DNA from: Paragordius varius | Lineage: Eukaryota > Animalia > Nematomorpha | Direction: 5' to 3' | Assembly: GCA_964247055.1 (NCBI GenBank) | Contig: OZ176053.1 | Location: 14,133,899-14,197,898, forward strand | Length of the DNA stretch: 64,000 bases | In this document: in pieces, positions 23,601 to 64,000 of the stretch | Layout: every line of letters begins with the position of its first letter | Position numbering within the stretch: the first letter of the stretch is position 1 | Made by a program: the position numbers and the translations under genes | Notes under the pieces: model-generated | Databases searched by the model: none | Told to the model about the DNA's origin: nothing | Seen by the model: only the letters and a program-made list of their open reading frames with translations

Positions 23601-24700
23601 GCAAAAAAAATTATGGCGACATCACCTGATCAAATTTGGATTTTAGGTAGCCATTTTTATTTTTAAAATCGTATAAAATAAATTTTTTAAATATTTAAAA
23701 AATTCAAAAAAATTACATTTATACTCCGATCTCGAAAATATTTGGGGTGATGATGGAACTACCATAGGGCTACCCAAAAAAAATTATGGCGACATCACCT
23801 GATCAAATTTGGATTTTAGGTAGCCATTTTTATTTTTAAAATCGTATAAAATAAATTTTTTAAATATTTAAAAAATTCATAAAAATTACATTTATAGTCC
23901 GATCCCCAAAATATTTGGGGTGATGATGGAATTACCATAGGGCTACCCAAAAAAAATTATGGTGACATCACCTGATCAAATTTGGATTTTAGGTAGCCAT
24001 TTTTATTTTTAATATCGTATAAAATAAATTTTTTAAATATTTAAAAAATTCAAAAAAATTACATTTATACTCCGATCTCGAAAGTATTTGGGGTGATGAT
24101 GGAACTACCATAGGGCTACCCAAAAAAAATTATGGGGACACCACCTGATCAAATTTGGATTTTAGGTAGCCATTTTTATTTTTAAAATCGTATAAAATAA
24201 ATTTTTTAAATATTTAAAAAAATTCATAAAAATTACATTTATACTCCGATCTCGAAAATATTTGGGGTGATGATGGAACTACCATAGGGCTACCCAAAAA
24301 AAATTATAGTGACATCACCTGATCAAATTTGGATTTTAGGTAGCCATTTTTATTTTTAAAATCGTATAAAATAAATTTTTTAAATATTTAAAAAATTCAT
24401 AAAAATTACATTTATAGTCCGATCTCGACAATATTTGGGGTGATGATGGAACTACCATAGGGCTACCCAAAAAAAATTATAGTGACATCACCTGATCAAA
24501 TTTGGATTTTAGGTAGCCATTTTTATTTTTAAAATCGTATAAAATAAATTTTTTAAATATTTAAATATTCATAAAAATTACATTTATAGTCCGATCCCCA
24601 AAATATTTGGGGTGATGATGGAACAACCATAGGGCTACGCAAAAAAAATTATGGCGACATCACCTGATCAAATTTGGATTTTAGGTAGCCATTTTTATTT
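14700..24700 (+). repeat. Higher-order repeat domain with a ~2.59-kb (15-monomer) period
   Basis: tagtata occurs at 14861, 17453 and 20045 (spacing 2592). The 1-bp-deletion marker actgatca occurs at 16371 and 18963. ttagccat occurs at 16221 and 18813. aaagtattt plus ggggacacc occurs at 21491 and 24081 (spacing 2590). Confidence 0.82.
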
Positions 24701-45500: not shown

Positions 45501-47470
45501 GGGCTACCCAAAAAAAATTATAGTGACATCACCTGATCAAATTTGGATTTTAGGTAGCCATTTTTATTTTTAAAATCGTATAAAATAAATTTTTTAAATA
45601 TTTAAAAAATTCATAAAAATTACATTTATAGTCCGATCCCCAAAATATTTGGGGTGATGATGGAACTACCATAGGGCTACCCAAAAAAAATTATAGTGAC
45701 ATCACCTGATCAAATTTGGATTTTAGGTAGCCATTTTTATTTTTAAAATCGTATAAAATAAATTTTTTAAATATTTAAAAAATTCATAAAAATTACATTT
45801 ATAGTCCGATCCCCAAAATATTTGGGGTGATGATGGAACTACCATAGGGCTACCCAAAAAAAATTATAGTTACATCACCTGATCAAATTTGGATTTTAGG
45901 TAGCCATTTTTATTTTTAAAATCGTATAAAATAAATTTTTTAAATATTTAAAAAATTCATAAAAATTACATTTATACTCCGATCTCGAAAATATTTGGGG
46001 TGATGATGGAACTACCATAGGGCTACCCAAAAAAAATTATGGTGACATCACCTGATTAAATTTGGATTTTAGGTAGCCATTTTTATTTTTAAAATCGTAT
46101 AAAATAAATTTTTTAAATATTTAAAAAATTCATAAAAATTACATTTATAGTCCGATCCCCAAAATATTTGGGGTGATGATGGAACAACCATAGGGCTACG
46201 CAAAAAAAATTATGGCGACATCACCTGATCAAATTTGGATTTTAGGTAGCCATTTTTATTTTTAAAATCGTATAAAATAAATTTTTTAAATATTGAAAAA
46301 ATTCAAAATAATTACATTTATACTCCGATCTCGAAAATATTTGGGGTGATGATGGAACTACCATAGGGCTACCCAAAAAAAATTATGGCGACATCACCTG
46401 ATCAAATTTGGATTTTAGGTAGCCATTTTTATTTTTAAAATCGTATAAAATAAATTTTTTAAATGTTTAAAAAATTCATAAAAATTACATTTATACTCCG
46501 ATCTCGAAAATATTTGGGGTGATGATGGAACTGCCATAGGGCTACCCAAAAAAAATTATAGTGACATCACCTGATCAAATTTGGATTTTAGGTAACCATT
46601 TTTATTTTTAATATCGTATAAAATAAATTTTTTAAATATTTAAAAAATTCATAAAAATTACATTTATAGTCCGATCCCCAAAATATTTGGGGTAATGATG
46701 GAACTACCATAGGGCTACCCAAAAAAAATTATAGTGACATCACCTGATCAAATTTGGATTTTAGGTAGCCATTTTTATTTTTAAAATCGTATAAAATAAA
46801 TTTTTTAAATATTTAAAAAATTCATAAAAATTACATTTATACTCCGATCCCCAAAATATTTGGGGTGATGATGGAACTACCATAGGGCTACCCAAAAAAA
46901 ATTATGGTGACATCACCTGATCAAATTTGGATTTTAGGTAGCCATTTTTATTTTTAAAATCGTATAAAATAAATTTTTTAAATATTTAAAAAATTCATTA
47001 AAATTACATTTATACTCCGATCTCGAAAATATTTGGGGTGATGATGGAACTACCATAGGGCTACCCAAAAAAAATTATAGTGACATCACCTGATCAAATT
47101 TGGATTTTAGGTAGCCATTTTTATTTTTAAAATCGTATAAAATAAATTTTTTAAATATTTAAAAAATTCATAAAAATTACATTTATAGTCCGATCCCCAA
47201 AATATTTGGGGTGATGATGGAACTACCATAGGGCTACCCAAAAAAAATTATAGTGACATCACCTGATCAAATTTGGATTTTAGGTAGCCATTTTTATTTT
47301 TAAAATCGTATAAAATAAATTTTTTAAATATTTAAAAAATTCAAAAAAATTACATTTATACTCCGATCTCGAAAATATTTGGGATGATGATGGAACTACC
47401 ATAGGGCTACCCAAAAAAATTTATGGTGACATCACCTGATCAAATTTGGATTTTAGGTAGCCATTTTTAT
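33502..47470 (+). repeat. Tandem duplication of a ~6.9-7.1-kb (40-41-monomer) satellite block, with a nested ~2.6-2.76-kb (15-16-monomer) repeat
   Basis: Private markers are paired at 6899-7072 bp: gatacgc 33601/40673, 4-bp-deleted caaattttttagg ~35021/41920, acatcccc ~34832/41731, attgaaaaaattcaaaat 35937/42836, 36802/43701 and 39389/46292, tttgtgg 36331/43230. The nested period is shown by ttcatta at 37331/40091 and gggatgat at ~37718/40478 (spacing 2760). Confidence 0.85.
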
Positions 47471-50400
47471 TTTTAAAATTGTATAAAATAAATTTTTTAA
47501 ATATTTAAAAAATTCATAAAAGTTACATTTATAGTCCGATCCCCAAAATATTTGTGGTGATGATGGAACTACCATAGGGCTACCCAAAAAAAATTATGGT
47601 GACATCACCTGATCAAATTTGGATTTTAGGTAGCCATTTTTATTTTTAAAATCGTATAAAATAAATTTTTTAAATATTTAAAAAATTCAAAAAAATTACA
47701 TTTATACTCCGATCTCGACAATATTTGGGGTGATGATGGAATTACCATAGGGCTACCCAAAAAAAATTATGGTGACATCACCTGATCAAATTTGAATTTT
47801 AGGTAGCCATTTTTATTTTTAAAATCGTATAAAATAAATTTTTTAAATATTTAAAAAATTCATAAAAATTACATTTATAGTCCGATCCCCAAAATATTTG
47901 GGGTGATGATGGAACTACCATAGGGCTACCCAAAAAAAATTATAGTGACATCACCTGATCAAATTTGGATTTTAGGTAGCCATTTTTATTTTTAAAATCG
48001 TATAAAATAAATTTTTTAAATATTTAAAAAATTCATAAAAATTTTATACTCCGATCTCGAAAATATTTGGGGTGATGATGGAACTACCATAGGGCTACCC
48101 AAAAAAAATTATAGTGACATCACCTGATCAAATTTGGATTTTAGGTAGCCATTTTTATTTTTAAAATCGTATAAAATAAATTTTTTAAATATTTAAAAAA
48201 TTCATAAAAATTACATTTATAGTCCGATCCCCAAAATATTTGGGGTGATGATGGAACTACCATAGGGCTACCCAAAAAAAATTATGGTGACATCACCTGA
48301 TCAAATTTGGATTTTAGGTAGCCATTTTTATTTTTAAAATCGTATAAAATAAATTTTTTAAATATTTAAAAAATTCATAAAAATTTTATACTCCGATCTC
48401 GAAAATATTTGGGGTGATGATGGAACTACCATAGGGCTACCCAAAAAAAATTATAGTGACATCACCTGATCAAATTTGGATTTTAGGTAGCCATTTTTAT
48501 TTTTAAAATCGTATAAAATAAATTTTTTAAATATTTAAAAAATTCATAAAAATTACATTTATAGTCCGATCCCCAAAATATTTGGGGTGATGATGGAACT
48601 ACCATAGGGCTACCCAAAAAAAATTATAGTTACATCACCTGATCAAATTTGGATTTTAGGTAGCCATTTTTATTTTTAAAATCGTATAAAATAAATTTTT
48701 TAAATATTTAAAAAATTCATAAAAATTACATTTATACTCCGATCTCGAAAATATTTGGGGTGATGATGGAACTACCATAGGGCTACGCAAAAAAAATTAT
48801 GGTGACATCACCTGATCAAATTTGGATTTTAGGTAGCCATTTTTATTTTTAAAATCGTATAAAATAAATTTTTTAAATATTTAAAAAATTCATAAAAATT
48901 ACATTTATACTCCGATCTCGAAAATATTTGGGGTGATGATGGAACTACCATAGGGCTACCCAAAACAATTTATGGTGACATCACCTGATCAAATTTGGAT
49001 TTTAGGTAGCCATTTTTATTTTTAAAATTGTATAAAATAAATTTTTTAAATATTTAAAAAATTCATAAAAGTTACATTTATAGTCCGATCCCCAAAATAT
49101 TTGTGGTGATGATGGAACTACCATAGGGCTACCCAAAAAAAATTATGGTGACATCACCTGATCAAATTTGGATTTTAGGTAGCCATTTTTATTTTTAAAA
49201 TCGTATAAAATAAATTTTTTAAATATTTAAAAAATTCAAAAAAATTACATTTATACTCCGATCTCGACAATATTTGGGGTGATGATGGAATTACCATAGG
49301 GCTACCCAAAAAAAATTATGGTGACATCACCTGATCAAATTTGAATTTTAGGTAGCCATTTTTATTTTTAAAATCGTATAAAATAAATTTTTTAAATATT
49401 TAAAAAATTCATAAAAATTACATTTATTGTCCGATCCCCAAAATATTTGGGGTGATGATGGAACTACCATAGGGCTACCCAAAAAAAATTATAGGGACAT
49501 CACCTGATCAAATTTGGATTTTAGGTAGCCATTTTTATTTTTAAAATCGTATAAAATAAATTTTTTAAATATTTAAAAAATTCATAAAAATTACATTTAT
49601 ACTCCGATCTCGAAAATATTTGGGGTGATGATGGAACTACCATAGGGCTACCCAAAAAAAATTATAGTGACATCACCTGATCAAATTTGGATTTTAGGTA
49701 GCCATTTTTATTTTTAAAATCGTATAAAATAAATTTTTTTAATATTTAAAAAATTCATAAAAATTACATTTATAGTCCGATCCCCAAAATATTTGGGGTG
49801 ATGATGGAACTACCATAGGGCTACGCAAAAAAAATTATGGCGACATCACCTGATCAAATTTGGATTTTAGGTAGCCATTTTTATTTTTAAAATCGTATAA
49901 AATAAATTTTTTAAATATTTAAAAAATTCAAAAAAATTACATTTATACTCCGATCGCGACAATATTTGGGGTGATGATGGAACTACCATAGGGCTACCCA
50001 AAAAAAATTATGGTGACATCACCTGATCAAATTTGGATTTTAGGTAGCCATTTTTATTTTAAAATCGTATAAAATAAATTTTTTAAATATTTAAAAAATT
50101 CATAAAAATATACATTTATAGTCCGATCCCCAAAATATTTGGGGTGATGATAGAACTACCATAGGGCTACCCAAAAAAAATTATGGTGACATCACCTGAT
50201 CAAATTTGGATTTTAGGTAGCCATTTTTATTTTTAAAATCGTATAAAATAAATTTTTTAAATATTTAAAAAATTCATAAAAATTTTATACTCCGATCTCG
50301 AAAATATTTGGGGTGATGATGGAACTACCATAGGGCTACCCAAAAAAAATTATAGTGACATCACCTGATCAAATTTGGATTTTAGGTAGCCATTTTTATT

Positions 50401-52912
50401 TTTAAAATCGTATAAAATAAATTTTTTAAATATTTAAAAAATTCATAAAAATTACATTTATAGTCCGATCCCCAAAATATTTGGGGTGATGATGGAACTA
50501 CCATAGGGCTACCCAAAAAAAATTATAGTGACATCACCTGATCAAATTTGGATTTTAGGTAGCCATTTTTATTTTTAAAATCGTATAAAATAAATTTTTT
50601 AAATATTTAAAAAATTCATAAAAATTACATTTATACTCCGATCTCGAAAATATTTGGGGTGATGATGGAACTACCATAGGGCTACGCAAAAAAAATTATG
50701 GTGACATCACCTGATCAAATTTGGATTTTAGGTAGCCATTTTTATTTTTAAAATCGTATAAAATAAATTTTTTAAATATTTAAAAAATTCATAAAAATTA
50801 CATTTATACTCCGATCTCGAAAATATTTGGGGTGATGATGGAACTACCATAGGGCTACCCAAAAAAATTTATGGTGACATCACCTGATCAAATTTGGATT
50901 TTAGGTAGCCATTTTTATTTTTAAAATTGTATAAAATAAATTTTTTAAATATTTAAAAAATTCATAAAAGTTACATTTATAGTCCGATCCCCAAAATATT
51001 TGTGGTGATGATGGAACTACCATAGGGCTACCCAAAAAAAATTATGGTGACATCACCTGATCAAATTTGGATTTTAGGTAACCATTTTTATTTTTAAAAT
51101 CGTATAAAATAAATTTTTTAAATATTTAAAAAATTCAAAAAAATTACATTTATACTCCGATCTCGACAATATTTGGGGTGATGATGGAATTACCATAGGG
51201 CTACCCAAAAAAAATTATGGTGACATCACCTGATCAAATTTGAATTTTAGGTAGCCATTTTTATTTTTAAAATCGTATAAAATAAATTTTTTAAATATTT
51301 AAAAAATTCATAAAAATTACATTTATAGTCCGATCCCCAAAATATTTGGGGTGATGATGGAACTACCATAGGGCTACCCAAAAAAAATTATAGGGACATC
51401 ACCTGATCAAATTTGGATTTTAGGTAGCCATTTTTATTTTTAAAATCGTATAAAATAAATTTTTTAAATATTTAAAAAATTCATAAAAATTACATTTATA
51501 CTCCGATCTCGAAAATATTTGGGGTGATGATGGAACTACCATAGGGCTACCCAAAAAAAATTATAGTGACATCACCTGATCAAATTTGGATTTTAGGTAG
51601 CCATTTTTATTTTTAAAATCGTATAAAATAAATTTTTTAAATATTTAAAAAATTCATAAAAATTACATTTATAGTCCGATCCCCAAAATATTTGGGGTGA
51701 TGATGGAACTACCATAGGGCTACCCAAAAAAAATTATGGTGACATCACCTGATCAAATTTGGATTTTAGGTAGCCATTTTTATTTTTAAAATCGTATAAA
51801 ATAAATTTTTTAAATATTTAAAAAATTCAAAAAAATTACATTTATACTCCGATCTCGACAATATTTGGGGTGATGATGGAATTACCATAGGGCTACCCAA
51901 AAAAAATTATGGTGACATCACCTGATCAAATTTGAATTTTAGGTAGCCATTTTTATTTTTAAAATCGTATAAAATAAATTTTTTAAATATTTAAAAAATT
52001 CATAAAAATTACATTTATAGTCCGATCCCCAAAATATTTGGGGTGATGATGGAACTACCATAGGGCTACCCAAAAAAAATTATGGCGACATCACCTGATC
52101 AAATTTGGATTTTAGGTAGCCATTTTTATTATTAAAATCGTATAAAATAAATTTTTTAAATATTTAAAAAATTCAAAAAAATTACATTTATACTCCGATC
52201 GCGACAATATTTGGGGTGATGATGGAACTACCATAGGGCTACCCAAAAAAAATTATGGTGACATCACCTGATCAAATTTGGATTTTAGGTAGCCATTTTT
52301 ATTTTAAAATCGTATAAAATAAATTTTTTAAATATTTAAAAAATTCATAAAAATTACATTTATAGTCCGATCCCCAAAATATTTGGGGTGATGATAGAAC
52401 TACCATAGGGCTACGCAAAAAAAATTATGGCGACATCACCTGATCAAATTTGGATTTTAGGTAGCCATTTTTATTTTTAAAATCGTATAAAATAAATTTT
52501 TTAAATATTTAAAAAATTCAAAAAAATTACATTTATACTCCGATCTCGACAATATTTGGGGTGATGATGGAACTACCATAGGGCTACCCAAAAAAAATTA
52601 TGGTGACATCACCTGATCAAATTTGGATTTTAGGTAGCCATTTTTTATAAAATCTAAATTTTTTAAATATTTAAAAAATTCAAAAAAATTACATTTATAC
52701 TCCGATCTCGAAAATATTTGGGGTGATGATGGAACTACCATAGGGCTACCAAAAAAAATTATGGTGACATCACCTGATCAAATTTGGATTTTAGGTAGCC
52801 ATTTTTATTTTTAAAATCGTAATTTTGTCAATATTTATAAAATTCATAAAAATAACATTTATATTCCGATCTCAAAAATAATTGGGGTGATGATGGAACT
52901 ACTAAAGGGCTA

Positions 52913-53943
52913 TTTTCTGCATTCCCCCTATCCGTCGTCTATCATTTTTCGGCATTCCTCCTATCCGTCGTCGGTCATTTTTTAGCAATCATCCTATCCG
53001 TCGTCAGTCTGCTTCTGTCCCTCACTTTCTAGCCGTCGTCAGTTGGTTTTCTGCATTCCCCCTATCCGTCGTCAGTCATTTTTCAACAATCATTCTATCC
53101 GTCGTCAGTCATTTTTCGGCATTCCTCCTATCTGTCGTCAGTCATTTTTCAGCAATTATTCTATCCGTCGTCAGTCTGTTTCTGTTCCTCACTTTCTAGC
53201 CGTCGTCAGTTGGTTTTCTGCATTTCCCCTATCCGTCGTCAGTCATTTTTCAACAATTATCCTATCCGTCGTCAGTCATTTTTTAGCAATCATCCTATCC
53301 GTCGTCAGTCTGTTTCTGTCCCTCACTTTCTAGCCGTCGTCAGTTGGTTTTCTGCATTTCCCCTATCCGTCGTCAGTTGGTTTTCTGCATTTCCCCTATC
53401 CGTCGTCAGTCATTTTTCAACAATCATCCTATCCGTCGTCAGTCATTTTTCGGAATTCCTCCTATCCGTCGTCAGTCATTTTTTAGCAATCATCCTATCC
53501 GTCGTCAGTCTGTTTCTGCCCCTCACTTTCTAGCCGTCGTCAGTTGGTTTTCTGCATTTCCCCTATCCGTCGTCAGTCATTTTTCAACAATCATCCTATC
53601 CGTCGTCAGTCATTTTTTAGCAATCATCCTATTCGTCGTCAGTCTGTTTCTGCCCCTCACTTTCTAGCCGTCGTCAGTTGGTTTTCTGCATTTCCCCTAT
53701 CCGTCGTCAGTCATTTTTCGGCATTCCTCCTATCCGTCGTCAGTCATTTTTTAGCAATCATTCTATCCGTCGTCAGTCTGTTTTTGTCCGTCACTTTCTA
53801 GCCGTCGTCAGTTGGTTTTTTGCATTCCCCCTATCCGTCGTCAGTCATTTTTCAACAATCATTCTATCCGTCGTCAGTAATTTTTCGGTATTTCCCTATC
53901 CGTCGTCAGTCATTTTTGAACAATCATCCTATGTGTCGTCAGT
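52913..53943 (+). repeat. 33/35-bp compound minisatellite with conserved core CCGTCGTCAGT, 31 units (left arm)
   Basis: Core (tat)ccgtcgtcagt alternates with five spacer types: tggttttctgcattcccc, catttttcaacaatcatc, catttttcggcattcctc, cattttttagcaatcatc, and ctgtttctgtccctcactttctag (35-bp unit). Units were counted by eye. Confidence 0.95.
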
Positions 53944-54341
53944 CTCTTCCTAGTCGCCAATTCGTTTGCATTACTCCTCTCGAGAGATATGAAGAAATAT
54001 TTTAAGAAATTGTTAGAAGATATTAAAAAGCATATTTAAACATTTCCACGGGAATTCACTTTTAATCACACTATTTTGTAGGGCATTAATATTTTCCAGA
54101 CAAATCACAAAATTAACAATTACACACCCAAATCAATATAAACACTAATTTCCAAATATACAAATGTTTAAGCTTTTTTATAAATGTTTTAGATACAAGT
54201 TTTCAATTATTATTTAATGGTATCTAAAAACTGAAAATATGTTTTTTTCTGTGTTTTATTGTAATAATTAATATGATAACCTAGTATGAATCTTAGCACT
54301 CCTTAATAATTATGATTATTTAAAATATCTATAAAATAATG
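53944..54341 (+). repeat. Left inverted-repeat arm, segment A (reverse complement of ~59960-60290)
   Basis: tgttagaagatattaaaaagcatatttaaacatttccacgggaattcacttttaatcacac (from 54011) is the reverse complement of gtgtgattaaaagtgaattccggtggaaatgtttaaatatgttttttaatatcttctaac (~60199-60258). agtctcttcctagtcgccaattcgtt mirrors aacgaactggcgactgctaggaagagact. Homology continues to ctagtatgaatcttagcactccttaataattatga (~54281-54315). Confidence 0.93.
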
Positions 54342-54389
54342 ATGTAGGAATCGTCGTAAAATAACGCAAATAATAAAAATATAATTTTT

Positions 54390-54428
54390 TAATTCTCAAA
54401 TTTTTGCCATAGCATCATCAGGAGATTA
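54390..54428 (-). ncRNA. Degenerate minimal type-I hammerhead-ribozyme-like motif near the 3' end of the PLE remnant
   Basis: The minus strand reads TAATCTC-CTGATGA-TGC-TATG-GCA-AAAA-TTT-GAGAATTA. It has the CUGAUGA core, a 3-bp stem II, and stem I pairing of TAATCTC with GAGAATTA (one bulge). The GAAA box reads AAAA and stem III is too short, so it is probably inactive. Confidence 0.4.
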
Positions 54429-54719
54429 GTTAAGAAAAATATATATAATATAAGAAAATAATAATTAAAAAAATGAACAAAATCATGGTTGATGTTATTA
54501 TATAGGAAAATAATCACAAACCGTTAGTGAACAAAAGAAAGAAAGATCACTTAGAAAACCGTTGTGATGTAAAAAATCAAATGTGTATTTTTTTCACAAA
54601 AATTAATTGTAAATAAATGTATAAGCGTAAAATTATTAAAATTTAAGTAATATCTACACTATAAAATGGTTTGTCATTAAAAATTCGATAATTTTTTATA
54701 AATGATTTAGTTTCAGAAT

Positions 54720-55140
54720 TTATAGCTTTCCACGGCGATTAAGCAAACCATCTTCTGCGCTCTGTATAAAGAGGGCTTTTTTTGTTATACTTGCGCTGTG
54801 TTTTCTTTCAACGAAAACGTCAATTCTGTTTGAGCATTCATGGTTGTTATCCACGCAATGCAGAAACATGGCCGAACTTTTGCTTTTTTAATGTTCCTTA
54901 TATCTTACCTTTAAGTTTGGCTTTGACTGGCCTATGTAAATTGCCGGGCAGTTCTTGCATCTCAACTTGTATATCGTGTTTTCCATTTCCACTTCCTTAG
55001 ACTTTAAACGTTTGATGTTGGTTTATAAACTACTTTTATGTTACACAACCATCTGGATTTGCCGAAATAAGAGATAGATTTCTTTTTAAAATTTTGTTTA
55101 CTGTTGTTGTAATCCATTCTTTTTGATAGCCTTGTTGCTA
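54720..55140 (-). pseudogene. GIY-YIG endonuclease pseudogene fragment of Penelope-like type
   Basis: Manual minus-strand translation from 55019 gives NIKRLKSKEVEMENTIYKLRCKNCPAIYIGQSKPNLKVRYKEH*KSKSSAMFLHCVDNNHECSNRIDVFVERKHSASITKKALFIQSAEDGLLNRRGKL*. This fits the PLE endonuclease pattern (V/I)Y.I.C..C...YIG.T...L..R..EH...S....H......H....ALFI.....LN. There is an in-frame stop at 54888-54890. Upstream, in another frame and with further stops, lies QQGYQKEWITTTVNKILKR, which resembles the NGY-type motif in the linker between RT and endonuclease. Confidence 0.85.
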
Positions 55141-55179
55141 AATACTGTACAATTTCATTTGTTTGATATATCTGCATTT

Positions 55180-55410
55180 AATAATGTTTGTTTAGTTATT
55201 TTAACTTACGCTTTGTTTGTGTGTTTTCATTGTTTGCAATATTGATATTTTTTATTTGGGCCATCAATGTTTTACTATGTTTTTTAGTACATTTCAAACT
55301 AATCATCCTTTTTTTGTTATCGTTTAAAACGGTACTTTTGCAGCCGATAACATGTTAAAATAAAAACAATTATATTTTTTTATAATCATGTTTGCATAGT
55401 TTGGTATTTT
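55180..55410 (+). repeat. Left inverted-repeat arm, segment B (reverse complement of 59384-59612)
   Basis: cgtttaaaacggtacttttgcagccgataacatgtt (55321-55356) is the exact reverse complement of aacatgttatcggctgcaaaagtaccgttttaaacg (59440-59475). Colinear homology runs from ataatgtttgtttagttatt to catagtttggtatttt. Confidence 0.93.
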
Positions 55411-57180
55411 AAAACATATCAAAAAAAAATATATGATGGCATCCCAACTTTTTATTACCTTTTTGGTGTTATATTCTGCCCACCTTTTCTTCCTTAAAAA
55501 ACTCTTATATGATGGTGATATGTCAGAAACTTTGAATGAAGTTTTGCCTCAAATATTAAAAATTGTTTGATGTTAATTTTAAGTTGTTTAGATAGGGTTT
55601 TTTAGGCTTATTCAAACCAATCAAGGCAAATAGAAACTAAATTATAGGCCAATTAAGATTGTAAATATATGTTAAAATTATTAATTTTAAAGCTGAGTTA
55701 TCATTTTTTACAAAATAAAGATCAATCAAAAGGATTATAAAAAACAAAGTGATATTGAGAGATCTATTTAAAATCAAAAAAATGTCAGTGGATTAACGAG
55801 TTTAGTAAAGTAAAAATCTAAACAACAAATATTCATTAATTAAAATAAATGCAAAGAGTGTCAATAACTTTTAAATTTAAATTAGCGTAAAAAGATATTT
55901 TTCAAAATTCTAACATTTATTAAATTTATGCTATAAACATATTCTAATATTGTTTTTTAAGCTACTTTTTTAACTTAAGTTGTTAACTTCAAAAATGTTT
56001 GCAAAAAATATTATTATTTATAAAAAGCATAAAATGATATGTTTAATCATTTATAAATTCGTATTAATAACATAACTTTTATAGTTTTTAAAATAAAAAA
56101 AAATTCCAAACATGGTTAAAATTTATATAACCTTGATTTTCTATATTTACAAAAAAATAATTTTTATATTTTATATTTTTTAATATAAATGTCAATTAAT
56201 TAATGCATAGAAATATTTAAATTAAAAAAATATCATAATTTATTTATTTGTAAATTGAAATATATAATATTATTGTTAACAATATTTTTTAATATTTTAT
56301 TTATTTTGAGCACAATCTGTAAAAATATATATACGTCAAATTTTTTTTATTAAACATTGTTTTTAACAATATAGTTCTCCTTTTTGTTAATTTAAACTGT
56401 TAATAATTATTTGTTTTGCGTTTTGCCTGTTTTATCTAGATATTTCATTAAAAAAAATAATCATTTATTATTTTTAAATAAAAAATGTTTGTTAGAAACA
56501 AATACTATAATTTTTTAATAATTACTCTCAAAAAGTAATTAAATATCAAAATGATTATATTGATGTATATCATTATCTGATAAAATATTTATAGCAATAG
56601 AAGAGCTTATTCAATTGATGATCTACATATTTTCGATTTATTTAACAGGCTTTATACGTTTTATCCTACTTTTTTTTCCATTTTGTGAGTTATCAAAATC
56701 ATTAAATTAACGTAACTAATAATATAATTTAATTATTTCAGTAAACCTAATAGAAAATGCTATTTAATTAATACACATAATTATTTATTAATTTTAGGTC
56801 ACACTTTACAACTAAATAGAATTATTATAGAAATAAATAAATATGGTTTGTACTCCATACCAACTATAATAAAAATATTTTAACCGAAAACACATGGTGC
56901 GTTCGCTAAGAACTAATTTATATAAAAAATTTTAGTGAACTATGTTTTAATAAAGTTAAATTCATGTACATTATTTATAAAGTGACAACATATTACAATA
57001 GCATATGTTAGTCAAGAAAAAATAAAAAAATATCTTTTTTAAAATTAGATAAGAATATTATTTTTTTAAAAAAACATGTTTCTGATCTTTATAAACCAAA
57101 AATGTTTTATGCTATACAAAAAAATGTTGTTTTATTTAGGTAAATATTTTAGCAATTAAAATATAAAAACATATCTTATA

Positions 57181-57276
57181 AATGGCACTATCATAGATGT
57201 TTTACCATAAAGAAAGTATTATGAAACAATGGCACTATCAAAGATGTTTTACCATAAAGAAAGTATTATGAAACAA
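57181..57276 (+). repeat. 47-bp tandem duplication with one mismatch
   Basis: aatggcactatcatagatgttttaccataaagaaagtattatgaaac at 57181 is followed by aatggcactatcaaagatgttttaccataaagaaagtattatgaaac at 57228. Confidence 0.95.
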
Positions 57277-57599
57277 AATAATTTTTTATAATTAAACTAC
57301 AGTTTAATACAAATTCTAATTTAGTTTTAGATGCGATTATAATTTAAAATAATAAATTTACTAAAAGAATTATTTTAATAATAATTAATTTTTGTATTCG
57401 TTAAACCTAGATAAAAGAATAGTTTTATGTTAACGCTTAGTCTTGTTTTAGGTCGATTAGATATTATTTTATCACAATTTATAATCAATATAATTGATAT
57501 AATTTTTATTAACAACATCTTGCACATAAAATTATTATTATTTTTATTTATTTAATTAGAAAAAATGATCAATACCAGATTTATTCATTATAATAAACA

Positions 57600-58040
57600 A
57601 TATACAAAATTTTTTATAATACTTTAATTGTAACACGTAATTACTGTGTTCTAATTCAAATATATAATAGGATATAAAAGACTTGCATTAAAAACATAAT
57701 AATAAATTCCAAATTCTCAATAATTTGATTATATATAATTCACGCTGTAGTTGAATGCGAAATATTTATCGGTTTTATGTAACAACTTATTAATAAAATT
57801 GATATAAAAATATTTATTTTTTTCAATATTAAAAAAAACTACCATATTTATTTATTATAATAATTATAGTAATATGCAAAATTTAGTTTAATACTTTTAT
57901 TGTAACACGTAATTTTACTCCAATATAAATAAATAATTTTATATAACATAGTCTTTTATTAAAAACATATTATAAAATGTAAAATTTAAATTTAAAATAT
58001 TTAAATTACATGCTGTAGTTGAATGCAAAATATTAATTAA
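57600..58040 (+). repeat. Diverged ~270-bp tandem duplication
   Basis: tgtaacacgtaatt occurs at 57629 and 57901. gctgtagttgaatgc(g/a)aaatatt occurs at 57744 and 58012. Confidence 0.75.
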
Positions 58041-58239
58041 GAAAGTTTATTAAATGATATTTAAAAAAACTGACTTTAATGGCTTGAAATTATCATTATT
58101 TATGCAATTCAACAAATATTATATTTCAAACATATATCTATAAAATCAAACTTTTTTATTATTCTTTTCTGTTCATTTGCCTTTTGGAAAGACTTATTAA
58201 TAAATTTTGTTAAAAAACATTTTGTTCAAATTACATATT

Positions 58240-59383
58240 TGTAACTGATAAAGATTAATCACGCATCAAATTTTAGCGGCAATTAAACAATCTATAGCTT
58301 AATACAATTACAAACTATGATGTTATAAAAAATATAAATAACAAAATTATAACATAAAAAACGCATAAGACAAAATAAGTAAACATCGGTAGAGACAAAT
58401 ATATAAACACATATATAGCCTAATGCATAATGACCACGTATAATAAACTATGAAAATCACATTCCTTTATCTTTAACATGTTATAAAGCTGCGTACGTAC
58501 TGTTTAAAACAATGACGAGAAATAAACGTTTTAAAATGTTGTAAAAAACCTGGTAAAACATTCATGTTTCTAATGCAAAATATCGATTGTGCAAACAAAG
58601 TCAACAGACAAAAAACGCATTAGAAATATAACGTAAGCATCAGGATACTATTTTAAAATATCATAATTATTTAGATGAGCTAAGATTCTTACTAGAATAT
58701 GATATTAATTATTTAAAAAGCCTGTACCATTAAACACAGAAAAATATATATTTTTATACTTTTGATAGAAACAGTTAATCATGCATCAATTAAGCGGAAA
58801 ATATAAAAACACATATATAGTGTAATGCATAATACCCCAAACAGTTAAACTAAAAAAATCACATAATTGTCAACAAAAATAGAATAATTATCTTTTGTAT
58901 TTAACATGTTATCCAGCTGCGAAAGTTCCAATTAAAACTATGATCAAAAAATAAAAATTGCTTTAAAATGTAAAAAAACATTAATGGTCCAATTTAAATA
59001 TCGATGTTGCAAAAAAAATCAACACACAAATAACGCAGAAGATAAAATAAAAACATTAATTCACTGATATATCGAAATTAGGGGCGGCAAGATTCATACT
59101 AGCTTAATACCCCAATCACATAATTGTCAACAAAAATAGAATAATTATCTTTCGTATTTATGATGCCAGCTGCCAAACTTATAACCCAAAAGGTAAAACA
59201 AGTAAACATGAATGCACTGATATATCAAAATATTATTTATATGCGGCAAGATTCATACTAGATTATTATAATTATTAATAAATAGCCTGTATAATAAAAC
59301 ACAGAAAAAAAAATATATTTTTATAATTTTGATACTATTAAAAAAAATAATCATACTCACATCTATAGCGTACATATTGGATC
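58240..59383 (+). repeat. Old, diverged ~0.4-0.5-kb tandem copies related to the inverted-arm sequence
   Basis: aacatgttat...gctgc occurs at 58475 and 58903, versus 59440 in the arm. aaacacatatatag..taatgcataat occurs at ~58405 and ~58807. aagatt(c/t)(a/t)tactag occurs at ~58682, ~59088 and ~59247, versus ~59651. atcacataattgtcaacaaaaatagaataattatcttt occurs at ~58858 and ~59115. Confidence 0.7.
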
Positions 59384-60290
59384 AAAATACCAAACTATGA
59401 AAACATGATTATAAAAAAATTATAATAGTTTTTATCTCTAACATGTTATCGGCTGCAAAAGTACCGTTTTAAACGATAACGAGAAAAGTATGATTAGTTT
59501 ATGTACTAAAAAACATAGTAAAACATTGATGGCCCTAATAAAAAATATCAATATTGCTAACAATTTAAACACACAAATAAAGCGTAAGTTAAAATAACTA
59601 AACAAACATTATATTGATATTTGTAAAAATCATAATTATTAAGGAGTGCTAAGATTTATACTAGGTTATCATATTAATTATTACAATAAAACACATAAAA
59701 AAGCATATTTTCAGTTTTTAGATACCATTAAATAATAATTGAAAACTCGTATTAAAAACATTTATTAAAAAGCTTAAACAATTGTATAGTTGGAAATATG
59801 TGTTTATATTAATTTGGGTGTGTAATTGTTAATTTTGTGATCCCTACATAATGGTGTGATTAAAAGTGAATTCCGGTGGAAATGTTTAAATATGTTTTTT
59901 AATATCTTCTAAAAACACACAAATAAAGCGTAAGTTAAAATAACTAAACAAACATTATATTGATATTTGTAAAAATCATAATTATTAAGGAGTGCTAAGA
60001 TTTATACTAGGTTATCATATTAATTATTACAAAAAACACATAAAAAAGCATATTTTCAGTTTTTAGATACCATTAAATAATAATTGAAAACTCGTATTAA
60101 AAACATTTATTAAAAAGCTTAAACAATTGTATAGTTGGAAATATGTGTTTATATTAATTTGGGTGTGTAATTGTTAATTTTGTGATCCCTACATAATGGT
60201 GTGATTAAAAGTGAATTCCGGTGGAAATGTTTAAATATGTTTTTTAATATCTTCTAACGATTTTAACGAACTGGCGACTGCTAGGAAGAG
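59384..60290 (-). repeat. Right inverted-repeat arm (segments B and A without the PLE insertion), including a 345/346-bp direct tandem duplication
   Basis: It is the reverse complement of 55410 to 55180 joined directly to 54341 to 53944. The internal direct copies are 59567-59910 and 59913-60255, with agtgctaaga at 59645/59991 and ttccgg at 59871/60216. Confidence 0.92.
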
Positions 60291-60646
60291 ACTGACGACA
60301 CATAGAATTCAAAATGACTGACGACGGATAGGGGAATGCCGAAAAATCACTGACGACGGATAGGATGATTGCTGAAAAATGACTGACGACGGATAAGAGG
60401 AATGCTTAAAACAAACTGACGACGGATAAGAACAGACTGACGACAGATAGGATGATTGTTGAAAAATGACTGACGACGGATTGGGAGAATGCAGGAAAAC
60501 CAACTGACGACGGATAGAAAAGGACGGACAAAAACAGACTGACGACGGATAGGGGGATGGCAAACCAACTGACGACGGCTAGAAAGTGACGGACAACGGA
60601 TAGAATGATTGCTGAAAAAATATGCTGAAAACGAACTGACGACGCC
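60291..60646 (-). repeat. Inverted, shorter and more degenerate copy of the CCGTCGTCAGT minisatellite, about 11 cores, abutting the telomere
   Basis: Repeated actgacgac(gg) cores carry spacers such as ataggggaatgccgaaaaa, ataggatgattgctgaaaaatg and gaatgcaggaaaacca, which are reverse complements of the left-arm spacer types. The innermost units mirror the innermost units of the left array. Confidence 0.93.
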
Positions 60647-60647
60647 G

Positions 60648-63600
60648 TTAGGGTTAGGGTTAGGGTTAGGGTTAGGGTTAGGGTTAGGGTTAGGGTTAGG
60701 GTTAGGGTTAGGGTTAGGGTTAGGGTTAGGGTTAGGGTTAGGGTTAGGGTTAGGGTTAGGGTTAGGGTTAGGGTTAGGGTTAGGGTTAGGGTTAGGGTTA
60801 GGGTTAGGGTTAGGGTTAGGGTTAGGGTTAGGGTTAGGGTTAGGGTTAGGGTTAGGGTTAGGGTTAGGGTTAGGGTTAGGGTTAGGGTTAGGGTTAGGGT
60901 TAGGGTTAAGGTTAGGGTTAGGGTTAGGGTTAGGGTTAGGGTTAGGGTTAGGGTTAGGGTTAGGGTTAGGGTTAGGGTTAGGGTTAGGGTTAGGGTTAGG
61001 GTTAGGGTTAGGGTTAGGGTTAGGGTTAGGGTTAGGGTTAGGGTTAGGGTTAGGGTTAGGGTTAGGGTTAGGGTTAGGGTTAGGGTTAGGGTTAGGGTTA
61101 GGGTTAGGGTTAGGGTTAGGGTTAGGGTTAGGGTTAGGGTTAGGGTTAGGGTTAGGGTTAGGGTTAGGGTTAGGGTTAGGGTTAGGGTTAGGGTTAGGGT
61201 TAGGGTTAGGGTTAGGGTTAGGGTTAGGGTTAGGGTTAGGGTTAGGGTTAGGGTTAGGGTTAGGGTTAGGGTTAGGGTTAGGGTTAGGGTTAGGGTTAGG
61301 GTTAGGGTTAGGGTTAGGGTTAGGGTTAGGGTTAGGGTTAGGGTTAGGGTTAGGGTTAGGGTTAGGGTTAGGGTTAGGGTTAGGGTTAGGGTTAGGGTTA
61401 GGGTTAGGGTTAGGGTTAGGGTTAGGGTTAGGGTTAGGGTTAGGGTTAGGGTTAGGGTTAGGGTTAGGGTTAGGGTTAGGGTTAGGGTTAGGGTTAGGGT
61501 TAGGGTTAGGGTTAGGGTTAGGGTTAGGGTTAGGGTTAGGGTTAGGGTTAGGGTTAGGGTTAGGGTTAGGGTTAGGGTTAGGGTTAGGGTTAGGGTTAGG
61601 GTTAGGGTTAGGGTTAGGGTTAGGGTTAGGGTTAGGGTTAGGGTTAGGGTTAGGGTTAGGGTTAGGGTTAGGGTTAGGGTTAGGGTTAGGGTTAGGGTTA
61701 GGGTTAGGGTTAGGGTTAGGGTTAGGGTTAGGGTTAGGGTTAGGGTTAGGGTTAGGGTTAGGGTTAGGGTTAGGGTTAGGGTTAGGGTTAGGGTTAGGGT
61801 TAGGGTTAGGGTTAGGGTTAGGGTTAGGGTTAGGGTTAGGGTTAGGGTTAGGGTTAGGGTTAGGGTTAGGGTTAGGGTTAGGGTTAGGGTTAGGGTTAGG
61901 GTTAGGGTTAGGGTTAGGGTTAGGGTTAGGGTTAGGGTTAGGGTTAGGGTTAGGGTTAGGGTTAGGGTTAGGGTTAGGGTTAGGGTTAGGGTTAGGGTTA
62001 GGGTTAGGGTTAGGGTTAGGGTTAGGGTTAGGGTTAGGGTTAGGGTTAGGGTTAGGGTTAGGGTTAGGGTTAGGGTTAGGGTTAGGGTTAGGGTTAGGGT
62101 TAGGGTTAGGGTTAGGGTTAGGGTTAGGGTTAGGGTTAGGGTTAGGGTTAGGGTTAGGGTTAGGGTTAGGGTTAGGGTTAGGGTTAGGGTTAGGGTTAGG
62201 GTTAGGGTTAGGGTTAGGGTTAGGGTTAGGGTTAGGGTTAGGGTTAGGGTTAGGGTTAGGGTTAGGGTTAGGGTTAGGGTTAGGGTTAGGGTTAGGGTTA
62301 GGGTTAGGGTTAGGGTTAGGGTTAGGGTTAGGGTTAGGGTTAGGGTTAGGGTTAGGGTTAGGGTTAGGGTTAGGGTTAGGGTTAGGGTTAGGGTTAGGGT
62401 TAGGGTTAGGGTTAGGGTTAGGGTTAGGGTTAGGGTTAGGGTTAGGGTTAGGGTTAGGGTTAGGGTTAGGGTTAGGGTTAGGGTTAGGGTTAGGGTTAGG
62501 GTTAGGGTTAGGGTTAGGGTTAGGGTTAGGGTTAGGGTTAGGGTTAGGGTTAGGGTTAGGGTTAGGGTTAGGGTTAGGGTTAGGGTTAGGGTTAGGGTTA
62601 GGGTTAGGGTTAGGGTTAGGGTTAGGGTTAGGGTTAGGGTTAGGGTTAGGGTTAGGGTTAGGGTTAGGGTTAGGGTTAGGGTTAGGGTTAGGGTTAGGGT
62701 TAGGGTTAGGGTTAGGGTTAGGGTTAGGGTTAGGGTTAGGGTTAGGGTTAGGGTTAGGGTTAGGGTTAGGGTTAGGGTTAGGGTTAGGGTTAGGGTTAGG
62801 GTTAGGGTTAGGGTTAGGGTTAGGGTTAGGGTTAGGGTTAGGGTTAGGGTTAGGGTTAGGGTTAGGGTTAGGGTTAGGGTTAGGGTTAGGGTTAGGGTTA
62901 GGGTTAGGGTTAGGGTTAGGGTTAGGGTTAGGGTTAGGGTTAGGGTTAGGGTTAGGGTTAGGGTTAGGGTTAGGGTTAGGGTTAGGGTTAGGGTTAGGGT
63001 TAGGGTTAGGGTTAGGGTTAGGGTTAGGGTTAGGGTTAGGGTTAGGGTTAGGGTTAGGGTTAGGGTTAGGGTTAGGGTTAGGGTTAGGGTTAGGGTTAGG
63101 GTTAGGGTTAGGGTTAGGGTTAGGGTTAGGGTTAGGGTTAGGGTTAGGGTTAGGGTTAGGGTTAGGGTTAGGGTTAGGGTTAGGGTTAGGGTTAGGGTTA
63201 GGGTTAGGGTTAGGGTTAGGGTTAGGGTTAGGGTTAGGGTTAGGGTTAGGGTTAGGGTTAGGGTTAGGGTTAGGGTTAGGGTTAGGGTTAGGGTTAGGGT
63301 TAGGGTTAGGGTTAGGGTTAGGGTTAGGGTTAGGGTTAGGGTTAGGGTTAGGGTTAGGGTTAGGGTTAGGGTTAGGGTTAGGGTTAGGGTTAGGGTTAGG
63401 GTTAGGGTTAGGGTTAGGGTTAGGGTTAGGGTTAGGGTTAGGGTTAGGGTTAGGGTTAGGGTTAGGGTTAGGGTTAGGGTTAGGGTTAGGGTTAGGGTTA
63501 GGGTTAGGGTTAGGGTTAGGGTTAGGGTTAGGGTTAGGGTTAGGGTTAGGGTTAGGGTTAGGGTTAGGGTTAGGGTTAGGGTTAGGGTTAGGGTTAGGGT

Positions 63601-64000
63601 TAGGGTTAGGGTTAGGGTTAGGGTTAGGGTTAGGGTTAGGGTTAGGGTTAGGGTTAGGGTTAGGGTTAGGGTTAGGGTTAGGGTTAGGGTTAGGGTTAGG
63701 GTTAGGGTTAGGGTTAGGGTTAGGGTTAGGGTTAGGGTTAGGGTTAGGGTTAGGGTTAGGGTTAGGGTTAGGGTTAGGGTTAGGGTTAGGGTTAGGGTTA
63801 GGGTTAGGGTTAGGGTTAGGGTTAGGGTTAGGGTTAGGGTTAGGGTTAGGGTTAGGGTTAGGGTTAGGGTTAGGGTTAGGGTTAGGGTTAGGGTTAGGGT
63901 TAGGGTTAGGGTTAGGGTTAGGGTTAGGGTTAGGGTTAGGGTTAGGGTTAGGGTTAGGGTTAGGGTTAGGGTTAGGGTTAGGGTTAGGGTTAGGGTTAGG
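60648..64000 (+). repeat. Telomeric (TTAGGG)n array, about 558 repeats, G-rich strand running 5' to 3' towards the window end
   Basis: TTAGGG is uninterrupted from 60648 to the end of the window, apart from one TTAAGG variant seen at 60906-60911. The orientation is that expected for a right chromosome end. Confidence 0.99.

What the first reader, a model, noticed from the sequence alone, without database searches (positions are those of the whole stretch)
52913..60646. A ~7.7-kb foldback-like element with minisatellite-tipped inverted arms forms the entire subtelomere
Seen in sequence: everything between satellite and telomere is bracketed by long inverted arms. Each arm has a 33/35-bp CCGTCGTCAGT minisatellite outermost and ~0.6 kb of AT-rich sequence inside it, around a ~4-kb spacer (55411-59383). 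Established knowledge: modular terminal inverted repeats built from ~30-bp tandem subunits are typical of Foldback-type DNA transposons such as Drosophila FB and Galileo. Inference: this is either a non-autonomous foldback element that landed at, or created, the chromosome end, or the scar of a fold-back/inverted-duplication repair event later capped by telomerase. No transposase is visible.
Basis: partly seen in the sequence, partly recalled or inferred. Interest (0 to 1): 0.78.

Follow-up and report, generated by a model that had tools for sequence, protein, structure and literature searches.

The report
Mirror-image subtelomere shared by seven ends
The 7.7-kb inverted-arm block between a large satellite and the telomere is real, but it is a chromosome-end module copied onto seven chromosome ends of this AT-rich animal genome, most likely the healed scar of one old fold-back duplication, not a jumping gene.

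Summary
Observation confirmed. Window 52913-60646 has mirrored arms. Each arm has a 33/35-bp minisatellite outermost and about 0.62 kb of AT-rich sequence inside, around a 3.97-kb spacer. It lies between a continuous 173-bp satellite (1-52912) and (TTAGGG)n running to the contig end.

New here:
- The same block sits at seven ends of the assembly (C4R, C3R, C1L, C2L, C5L, C7L and the 23.9-kb contig C28) and nowhere else. All 270 genome matches to the paired minisatellite core fall in those seven ends.
- All seven have the same telomere junction. Six have the same satellite junction.
- Left arms and right arms form two separate clades. Left versus right identity is 92.5-94.5% whichever ends are compared. 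Both clades show the same two subgroups.
- This means one old inverted duplication, later spread as a whole module, with no arm-to-arm homogenisation.
- There is no target-site duplication, no matching termini, no interstitial copy and no coding capacity.
- An 843-bp piece inside the left arm is one arm of a separate, genuine foldback-element family.

Verdict: a subtelomeric duplicon of fold-back origin. The transposon reading is rejected and an assembly artefact is unlikely. The scan noted the same unit before on another piece (s1-313190) and the telomere/minisatellite junction in this window (s1-299092). Whether the satellite is a centromere, making these ends telocentric, is untested.

The parts
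1..52912 (+). 173-bp AT-rich satellite (26% GC), continuous, at least 306 monomers, 95% matches. It abuts the module.
   Evidence: The same satellite lies in the terminal 0.01-0.83 Mb of the other module-bearing ends. At least 13,914 monomers genome-wide by an exact 19-mer.
52913..53944 (+). Proximal minisatellite array: 31 cores, five unit types (33 or 35 bp) forming a 167-bp higher-order repeat. Invariant core CTA[T/G]CCGTCGTCAGT. GC 45%, CpG o/e 1.5.
53945..54337 (+). Left arm, segment a (393 bp).
   Evidence: Mirrored at 59608-60310. Found only at the seven ends.
54338..55180 (+). Embedded 843-bp piece of a dispersed repeat, equal to one arm of a foldback-element family. Absent from the right arm, present in all seven left arms.
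55181..55410 (+). Left arm, segment b (230 bp). Homology to the right arm ends abruptly at its inner edge.
55411..58465 (.). Single-copy spacer, 16-23% GC, non-coding. Partly replaced or deleted in the second subgroup of ends.
58466..59382 (-). Decayed older copies of the arm unit in right-arm orientation: a' 58649-58767, b' 58875-59055, a' 59248-59345, at 70-74% identity.
   Evidence: Present at all seven ends.
59383..59612 (-). Right arm, segment b', 93% identical to b.
59608..60310 (-). Right arm, segment a'. It is present twice because of a 345-bp tandem duplication (59567-60257) specific to this end, and has a deletion of about 45 nt near its outer end.
60311..60646 (-). Distal minisatellite array (13 cores), the mirror image of the proximal array including unit order.
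60640..60652 (+). Telomere junction ...GACGACGC(C/G)G|TTAGGG inside a minisatellite core. It is the same at all seven ends.
60647..64000 (+). (TTAGGG)n, 3.35 kb, G-strand running 5'->3' to the end of the contig.

Best explanation
The block is a telomere-associated duplicon, not a mobile element. It is the common sequence between a large 173-bp satellite and the telomere at seven ends of this genome.

Shown:
- The same architecture at seven ends.
- The same telomere junction at all seven and the same satellite junction at six.
- No copy anywhere else in the assembly.
- Left and right arms diverged from each other before the ends diverged from one another.
- Both arms carry the same two subgroups.

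Inferred origin:
1. One ancestral end of the form satellite-minisatellite-a-b-spacer lost its distal part.
2. [quoted passage not shown]
3. Synthesis copied b, a and the minisatellite in reverse.
4. The resulting mirror chromosome broke inside the mirrored minisatellite.
5. Telomerase added TTAGGG at ...GACGACGC(C/G)G.

Inferred spread: recombination-dependent copying (break-induced replication or ectopic exchange) that starts in the shared satellite carries everything distal to it (module plus telomere) onto other satellite-bearing ends, giving two sequence subfamilies. Before that spread, a piece of a foldback element landed in the left arm.

Today the module most likely works only as buffer DNA between satellite and telomere. 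Its minisatellite core is the one part that looks constrained.
For: - Seven terminal copies and no other: arms, minisatellite, spacer. All 99 forward and 171 reverse genome matches of the paired core are accounted for by the seven ends.
- Identical telomere junction at all seven ends.
- Collinear satellite-to-module alignments. C3R and C28L align to this end as single 7-kb matches at about 96%.
- Identity matrix and ML tree: left and right arms are separated at 100/100 support. Left versus right is 92.5-94.5% regardless of end. The subgroups {C4R, C3R, C7L, C28L} and {C1L, C2L, C5L} are recovered in both arms with support of at least 99/95.
- The order of minisatellite unit types is mirrored. 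The distal arrays are shorter than the proximal ones at five of the seven ends (12-23 vs 21-55 cores overall; about equal at C2L and C5L), which partly fits truncation of the mirrored array.
- Decayed inverted arm copies sit at the distal spacer edge in all ends.
- The spacer of 3,972 bp is in the range of sequenced human fold-back duplications (766-70,466 bp, median 3,428 bp; PMC3907307).
- Inverted repeats up to about 25% diverged and kilobases apart fold back efficiently in single-stranded DNA at uncapped ends (PMC10164571).
- No ORF over 91 aa, no Pfam family and no Rfam family in the block.
Against: - The direction of the duplication (left arm as template) is not proven. The decayed b'a' copies could instead mean that the right side is an ordinary telomere-adjacent tandem array and that the left arm is the derived copy.
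- No microhomology can be recovered at the spacer/arm junction after 6-7% divergence. Identity along b shows no step.
- There is no outgroup or ancestral state.
- Read-level support for the assembly was not available.
- I could not fetch the remaining chromosome ends, so the statement that only this class of end carries the module rests on whole-genome searches that returned coordinates only.
Confidence: 0.7

Rival explanations
1. Same class of object (a subtelomeric duplicon) but a different origin. The ancestral end was satellite-spacer-(b'a')n-minisatellite-telomere, an ordinary telomere-adjacent tandem array that decays inward. The left arm is a later inverted copy of its outermost unit plus minisatellite, placed at the satellite boundary by template switching or an inversion.
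For: Older copies of the arm unit (70-74%) exist only in right-arm orientation and are in phase with the right arm. Tandem duplication is active on the right side, as shown by the 345-bp duplication private to this end.
Against: - There are no telomere repeats or other junction debris between satellite and left minisatellite.
- A simple end-to-end fusion would mirror the whole array and spacer, and that is not seen.
- This origin needs two breakpoints, where fold-back needs one.
Confidence: 0.15
2. A non-autonomous Foldback-type DNA transposon (like Drosophila FB, Galileo or Tetris) that inserts at, or creates, chromosome ends.
For: Long inverted arms with tandem subrepeats outermost and a non-coding middle resemble the foldback layout described in PMC4079207. 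A real foldback family does exist in this genome.
Against: - There is no interstitial copy. All seven copies have the same flanks: satellite on one side and telomere on the other.
- There is no target-site duplication and the outer termini do not match.
- The arms of one copy are no closer to each other than to arms at other ends.
- There is no transposase in the block.
Confidence: 0.03
3. An assembly artefact: palindromic chimeric long reads or mis-joins at contig ends.
For: Contig ends next to long satellites are error-prone. No reads were available to me.
Against: - The arms are 6-7% diverged and differ by an 843-bp insertion and a 345-bp duplication. There is also a 4-kb spacer between them.
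- Seven ends carry the structure with individual differences and a coherent phylogeny.
Confidence: 0.02
4. A maintained functional cap, not exclusive of the best explanation. The two outward-facing, CpG-rich minisatellite arrays are binding or promoter platforms: TERRA-like transcription into the telomere and transcription into the satellite. The module would be the whole short arm of telocentric chromosomes.
For: - An invariant 15-nt core is shared by five otherwise different unit types.
- The arrays have GC 45% and CpG o/e 1.5, against 20-26% GC around them.
- Arms and arrays are kept at all seven ends while the spacer is partly replaced.
- The satellite is confined, as far as scored, to the terminal 0.01-0.83 Mb of the same ends, with at least 2.4 Mb in total.
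- Human TERRA promoters are 61-29-37-bp CpG-rich repeats on about 20 subtelomeres (PMC6600276).
- Mouse telocentric ends have a conserved transition sequence between telomere and centromeric satellite (PMC12597820).
Against: - There are no expression, chromatin or binding data.
- Core invariance can come from array homogenisation alone.
- Only 40 of 1,048 satellite candidates were scored.
Confidence: 0.12

Closest known systems
Fold-back inverted duplications with a disomic spacer, healed by telomere addition (human inv-dup-del chromosomes; Hermetz et al. 2014, PMC3907307)
   Same: Mirrored arms around a single-copy spacer of a few kb (3,972 bp here; the human median is 3,428 bp). Telomere repeats are added directly to the inverted copy. 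Diverged inverted repeats lie at the spacer edge, as in 3 of 21 human junctions.
   Different: Here the duplicated arm is only 1-2.5 kb and ends in a minisatellite. The event is ancient (6-7% arm divergence), fixed, and has since been copied to seven chromosome ends. No ancestral state is available to show the terminal deletion.
Mouse telocentric chromosome ends: telomere, conserved truncated L1, TLC repeat arrays, minor satellite (Kalitsis et al. 2006, cited in PMC12597820)
   Same: A few kb of transition sequence between (TTAGGG)n and a large satellite. It is shared and homogenised among non-homologous chromosomes, with structural subtypes.
   Different: The sequence is unrelated. The module here is a mirror-image unit with two minisatellite arrays rather than an L1 plus TLC array. 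The centromeric nature of the 173-bp satellite is not shown. Only seven of roughly 27 telomere tracts carry it.
Foldback-type DNA transposons (Drosophila FB, Galileo, Tetris; PMC4079207, PMC3573991)
   Same: Long inverted arms whose outer domain is a tandem array of short units, with a non-coding middle domain and no transposase in the copy.
   Different: There is no target-site duplication, no matching termini and no dispersed copies. The arms are not more alike within a copy than between copies. All copies are bounded by satellite and telomere.
Human TERRA promoter repeats (61-29-37-bp CpG-island repeats on about 20 subtelomeres; PMC6600276)
   Same: Tandem repeats of about 30 bp that are GC- and CpG-rich compared with their surroundings. 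They lie next to the telomere at many ends and share conserved sequence.
   Different: Here the array touches the telomere directly and has a mirrored twin facing the satellite. Promoter activity is untested and there is no sequence similarity.

Membership tests
Foldback-type DNA transposon (FB / Galileo / Tetris) | Long terminal inverted repeats with internal tandem subrepeats around a middle domain | tested here: met
   mirrored arms with 33/35-bp arrays outermost and a 4-kb middle. This is a resemblance of layout only.
Foldback-type DNA transposon (FB / Galileo / Tetris) | Target-site duplication (7-10 bp) flanking the element | tested here: not met
   the left flank is the satellite end ...AAAGGGCTA and the right flank is (C/G)GTTAGGG. 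There is no direct repeat at any of the ends.
Foldback-type DNA transposon (FB / Galileo / Tetris) | Matching outer termini on the two arms | tested here: not met
   the left array starts in mid-unit (TTTTCTGCATTCC...) and the right array ends at a core (GGCGTCGTCAGT...). The arrays are cut at different phases.
Foldback-type DNA transposon (FB / Galileo / Tetris) | Copies dispersed at different, including interstitial, sites | tested here: not met
   the arms, spacer and all 270 paired-core matches lie only in seven terminal loci with the same flanks.
Foldback-type DNA transposon (FB / Galileo / Tetris) | A transposase, in the copy or in an autonomous partner | tested here: inconclusive
   No ORF over 91 aa and no Pfam family in the block. 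The rest of the genome was not searched for a partner.
Subtelomeric duplicon / telomere-associated sequence shared among ends | Lies directly next to a terminal telomere array | tested here: met
   TTAGGG tracts of 1.8-3.4 kb run to the contig end at all seven loci.
Subtelomeric duplicon / telomere-associated sequence shared among ends | Present at several non-homologous ends with high identity and absent from chromosome interiors | tested here: met
   seven ends, 87-98% identity over the module. The only stray piece is a 260-bp fragment on C8.
Subtelomeric duplicon / telomere-associated sequence shared among ends | Signs of exchange between ends (subfamilies, shared junctions) | tested here: met
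   identical telomere junction, and two subfamilies seen in both arms.
Fold-back inverted duplication healed by telomere addition | Inverted and non-inverted copies separated by a single-copy spacer of about 0.8-70 kb | tested here: met
   3,972-bp spacer. Compare PMC3907307.
Fold-back inverted duplication healed by telomere addition | Inverted homology or microhomology at the spacer / inverted-copy junction | tested here: inconclusive
   [quoted passage not shown] The exact junction shows no recoverable microhomology and no identity step.
Fold-back inverted duplication healed by telomere addition | Telomere repeats joined directly to the inverted copy | tested here: met
   TTAGGG starts inside a core of the mirrored minisatellite.
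Fold-back inverted duplication healed by telomere addition | Loss of the original distal sequence (terminal deletion) | not testable with these tools
   No ancestral or outgroup sequence is available. The genome has no relatives in the collections.
Telocentric chromosome end (mouse type) | Functional centromere satellite within a few kb of the telomere | not testable with these tools
   The satellite is 7.7 kb from the telomere and spans hundreds of kb at these ends. Centromere identity needs CenH3 mapping or cytology.
Telocentric chromosome end (mouse type) | Transition sequence conserved among chromosomes | tested here: met

The most novel reading that the evidence does not exclude
The seven ends are the centromeric ends of telocentric chromosomes. 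On this reading:
- The 173-bp satellite is the centromere. It totals at least 2.4 Mb and lies in the terminal 0.2-0.8 Mb of one end of each large contig.
- The 7.5-8.6-kb mirror module is the entire short arm.
- Its two outward-facing CpG-rich minisatellite arrays share an invariant 15-nt core. They are kept because they bind a factor or drive transcription outward into the telomere (TERRA-like) and into the satellite, or insulate the two chromatin domains.
- The mirrored arms could also yield hairpin RNA for small-RNA silencing.
Probability: 0.12. Interest if true: 0.7.

Novelty: new member of a known kind. Interest (0 to 1): 0.38.

Why it matters
- It gives a clean, datable natural example of three steps. 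One fold-back inverted duplication was healed by telomerase, became fixed, and was then propagated to many chromosome ends as a unit. The steps are ordered by three levels of divergence: arms 6-7%, subfamilies 3-4%, ends 0.2-1.5%.
- It defines one class of chromosome end, satellite plus mirror module, in a poorly studied, very AT-rich animal genome that earlier notes call hairworm-like.
- It provides a specific probe, the 15-nt minisatellite core, which exists nowhere else in the genome. The probe can be used for cytology, for testing whether these chromosomes are telocentric, and for asking whether telomere-adjacent minisatellites act as promoters outside vertebrates.
- It corrects a tempting mis-annotation as a Foldback transposon.

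Tried and rejected
I did not work around this and used coordinate-only searches afterwards.
- The metagenome scan for three spaced cores returned ten hits. All are unrelated tandem repeats (nine from GC-rich, microbial-looking contigs, one from a 38%-GC contig), with different inter-core sequence and no telomere repeats.
- Rfam at E<=0.1 over 52-61 kb found nothing.
- Pfam on the five non-minisatellite ORFs of 50-72 aa found nothing above noise.
- A looser self-comparison (word size 7, +1/-1 scoring), meant to find decayed arm copies on the left side of the spacer, gave only AT-rich pseudo-alignments at 55-60% identity. I take it as no evidence of mirrored relics there.
- A windowed identity profile along b, looking for a step that would mark a homeologous priming site, showed no step.
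- Literature searches for a description of this assembly's chromosome ends (Nematomorpha or hairworm plus telomere or chromosomes) found nothing relevant.
- I considered whether one module per chromosome is statistically supported. With six placed modules it is not (p about 0.15-0.5, depending on chromosome number), so I do not claim it.
- The organism was not identified by me. 'Hairworm-like' is an untested lead from earlier notes.
- The contig is not human-like.


Full report
WHAT IS IN THE WINDOW

The window is the right end of a 14,197,898-bp contig (C4) of a 110.56-Mb, 44-contig assembly. From left to right it holds the following.
- A continuous 173-bp satellite at 26% GC, from 1 to 52912, with at least 306 monomers at 95% matches.
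- A minisatellite at 52913-53944.
- AT-rich unique DNA.
- A second minisatellite in the opposite orientation at 60311-60646.
- (TTAGGG)n from 60647 to the last base.

The telomere G-strand runs 5'->3' to the end, as expected for a true terminus.

The inverted-repeat search and direct reading show mirrored arms.
- Segment a (53945-54337) matches 59608-60310.
- Segment b (55181-55410) matches 59383-59612.
- Stretches of 234 nt at 93% and 112 nt at 96% are complementary. BLAST E is about 1e-97 for a against a'.

The minisatellites are mirrored too.
- Both are built from five unit types of 33 or 35 bp that share an invariant core, CTA[T/G]CCGTCGTCAGT.
- Read from the outside toward the arm, both arrays show the same order of unit types, a 167-bp higher-order repeat.

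Four refinements apply.
1. The left arm is split by an 843-bp insert (54338-55180) that the right arm lacks.
2. The right arm has a 345-bp tandem duplication (59567-60257).
3. The right 0.9 kb of the 'spacer' contains 70-74% decayed copies of the arm unit in right-arm orientation (58649-58767, 58875-59055, 59248-59345).
4. The arms differ by 6-7%.

IT IS NOT UNIQUE TO THIS END

Whole-genome searches with the arm, the minisatellite and the spacer find the complete structure at seven places. All are terminal: C4 right (this window), C3 right, C1, C2, C5 and C7 left, and the left end of a 23.9-kb contig, C28. I fetched these ends and oriented them toward the telomere.
- All seven read satellite, minisatellite, a, insert, b, spacer, decayed b'a' copies, b'a', minisatellite, telomere.
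- The module is 7,475-8,578 bp long.
- The pattern of two cores spaced 15-30 nt has 99 forward and 171 reverse matches in the genome. The seven ends account for exactly 99 and 171. The minisatellite therefore exists nowhere else.
- The arms a and b have no interstitial copy. Of the spacer, only a 260-bp fragment on C8 lies elsewhere.

JUNCTIONS

- The telomere starts at the same point of a minisatellite core...GAACTGACGACGC(C/G)G|TTAGGG, at all seven ends.
- Six ends share the same satellite/minisatellite junction...AAAGGGCTA|TTTTCTGC.... C28 has a short deletion across it.
- Shared junctions mean inheritance of one event, not seven independent healings.

ORDER OF EVENTS

An identity matrix and a maximum-likelihood tree of a+b from both arms of all ends show the following.
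- Left arms and right arms sit on opposite sides of a 100/100 branch.
- Left versus right identity is 92.5-94.5%, whether or not the two arms come from the same end.
- Within each arm clade the same two groups appear with support of at least 99/95: {C4R, C3R, C7L, C28L} and {C1L, C2L, C5L}.
- The groups are 96-97% identical to each other and 98-99.8% identical within.
- The groups also differ in the spacer. Group 2 lacks 56342-57290 and has other DNA after b.
- The 843-bp insert is in all seven left arms and no right arm.

The order is therefore:
1. inverted duplication;
2. insertion into the left arm;
3. split into two subfamilies;
4. recent spread or homogenisation within subfamilies.

The two arms of one copy have not homogenised each other.

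WHY IT IS NOT A FOLDBACK TRANSPOSON

The layout resembles FB, Galileo and Tetris: tandem subrepeats in long inverted arms, a non-coding middle and no transposase (PMC4079207). The defining properties that can be tested fail.
- There is no target-site duplication.
- The outer termini are cut at different phases of the repeat.
- There are no dispersed copies.
- There is no coding capacity. The longest ORFs are minisatellite read-throughs of at most 91 aa, and five other ORFs of 50-72 aa have no Pfam family.

WHY IT IS NOT AN ARTEFACT

An artefactual palindrome would have near-identical, adjacent arms. Here the arms are 6-7% apart. They differ by an insertion and a duplication and are separated by 4 kb. 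Seven ends carry the structure with their own array lengths (proximal 21-55 cores, distal 12-23) and substitutions, and these fit a coherent tree. Read-level confirmation is still desirable.

MOST LIKELY ORIGIN (INFERRED)

The arrangement has minisatellites outermost, a single-copy spacer in the middle, and telomere added straight onto the mirrored copy. This is the signature of a fold-back inverted duplication.
- In 21 sequenced human cases the spacer was 766-70,466 bp, with a median of 3,428 bp. Some junctions lay in inverted repeats about 90% alike (PMC3907307). Here the spacer is 3,972 bp.
- In yeast, inverted repeats up to about 25% diverged and up to 30 kb apart fold back efficiently once an uncapped end is resected (PMC10164571).
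- Synthesis would then have copied b, a and the minisatellite in reverse. The mirror chromosome would have broken in the mirrored minisatellite and been healed by telomerase.
- The distal arrays are shorter than the proximal ones at five of the seven ends and about equal at C2L and C5L, which partly fits truncation.

The direction is not proven. The same decayed copies could mean that the right side is an ordinary telomere-adjacent array and the left arm the derived copy. Neither microhomology nor an identity step survives at the junction.

SPREAD (INFERRED)

The satellite next to the module is shared by the same ends.
- Every scored match lies in the terminal 0.01-0.83 Mb of C1 left, C2 left, C3 right, C4 right and C7 left.
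- It also adjoins the module at the C5 and C28 ends.
- It is in the same orientation relative to the telomere at all seven ends.

Recombination-dependent copying that starts in the satellite would carry the whole module and its telomere junction to another end. This explains the whole-module phylogeny. The best-known parallel is the homogenised transition sequence between telomere and centromeric satellite on mouse telocentric chromosomes (PMC12597820 and Kalitsis et al. 2006 cited there).

WHAT MIGHT BE FUNCTIONAL

- Only the minisatellite looks constrained. A 15-nt core is invariant across five otherwise different unit types. The arrays are GC- and CpG-rich islands: 45% GC and o/e 1.5, against 20-26% GC around them.
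- Human TERRA promoters are likewise CpG-rich tandem repeats of about 30 bp on about 20 subtelomeres (PMC6600276).
- Whether these arrays bind a factor or start transcription is untested. Homogenisation alone could keep the core.

THE TELOCENTRIC QUESTION

- An exact 19-mer of the satellite occurs 13,914 times, so the satellite is at least 2.4 Mb or 2.2% of the assembly.
- The monomer is nucleosome-sized and the arrays span hundreds of kb at one end of each of six of the seven largest contigs. That is what telocentric centromeres would look like.
- Against this, only 40 of 1,048 candidate matches were scored. The seven ends hold 2,576 of 10,089 telomere 36-mer matches, so roughly 20 further telomere tracts exist.
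- Earlier notes report ends of other kinds (s1-277343, s1-373570, s1-368101) and another centromere-like satellite near the other end of this contig (s1-257712). None of these were checked by me.
- I could not fetch the remaining ends. I leave this as the most novel reading not excluded.

SIDE FINDING

The 843-bp insert belongs to a dispersed family whose interstitial copies are true foldback elements. Examples are arms of about 447 nt at 97-99% with a 112-nt loop (L015, on C4 near 0.25 Mb) and arms of about 646 nt at 98-99% with a 225-nt loop (L008, on C5 near 6.76 Mb). The window copy is a single arm. A foldback transposon is therefore present, but nested inside the module, and it is not the cause of the module's symmetry.

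COMPARISON AND NOVELTY

- The object is a new sequence family. No relatives turned up in the metagenome scan, and nothing matched in Rfam or Pfam.
- Its kind is known: telomere-associated duplicons shared among ends.
- Its origin is of a known type: fold-back inverted duplication with telomere healing.
- What is unusual is how cleanly the history can be read, and that the mirror unit is the whole interval between a megabase-scale satellite and the telomere.
- The scan noted the same unit before on another piece of this genome (s1-313190).

Interest is moderate, 0.38.

Noticed in passing
window 54338-55180; L015:1055-2059; L008:764-2281; L012:1501-3527: The 843-bp insert in the left arm is one arm of a dispersed family whose interstitial copies are genuine foldback elements. 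Their arms are 0.45-1 kb, 94-99% complementary in three of the four copies examined, with loops of 110-230 nt and variable central deletions. No transposase or target-site duplication was worked out.
   Followed up: partly
window 1-52912 and the terminal 0.01-0.83 Mb of C1, C2, C7 (left) and C3, C4 (right): The 173-bp satellite has at least 13,914 monomers (at least 2.4 Mb). Among scored matches it is confined to the same ends that carry the module, in constant orientation relative to the telomere except for an inverted block on C1 at about 320-343 kb. It is a candidate terminal centromere satellite.
   Followed up: partly
G000:C8:4698363-4698622: This is the only interstitial relative of the module: a 260-bp stretch 88% identical to window 58978-59216, within the decayed-copy part of the spacer. 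It could be a relic of an old chromosome end or a stray fragment. The sequence could not be fetched.
   Followed up: no
window 59567-60257: A 345-bp tandem duplication (2.0 copies, 99% matches) of the b'/a' junction region, private to this end. The other six ends have one copy.
   Followed up: yes
G000:C28 (23,854-bp contig), L057/L058: An unplaced contig made only of telomere, module and satellite, probably the missing end of a chromosome or an alternative haplotype. Its satellite/minisatellite junction carries a deletion of about 60 bp relative to the other six ends.
   Followed up: partly
telomere junctions of the seven ends (window 60640-60652): The base before the first TTAGGG is C in subgroup 1 and G in subgroup 2. 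C3R has a TTAGCG variant as its first repeat. Telomere tracts in the assembly are 1.8-3.4 kb.
   Followed up: yes
window 57181-57276 and 57504-58020: Small internal repeats lie in the spacer: a 47-bp unit repeated twice at 97%, and a segment pair of about 250 bp at about 73% identity. There is no evident meaning.
   Followed up: no
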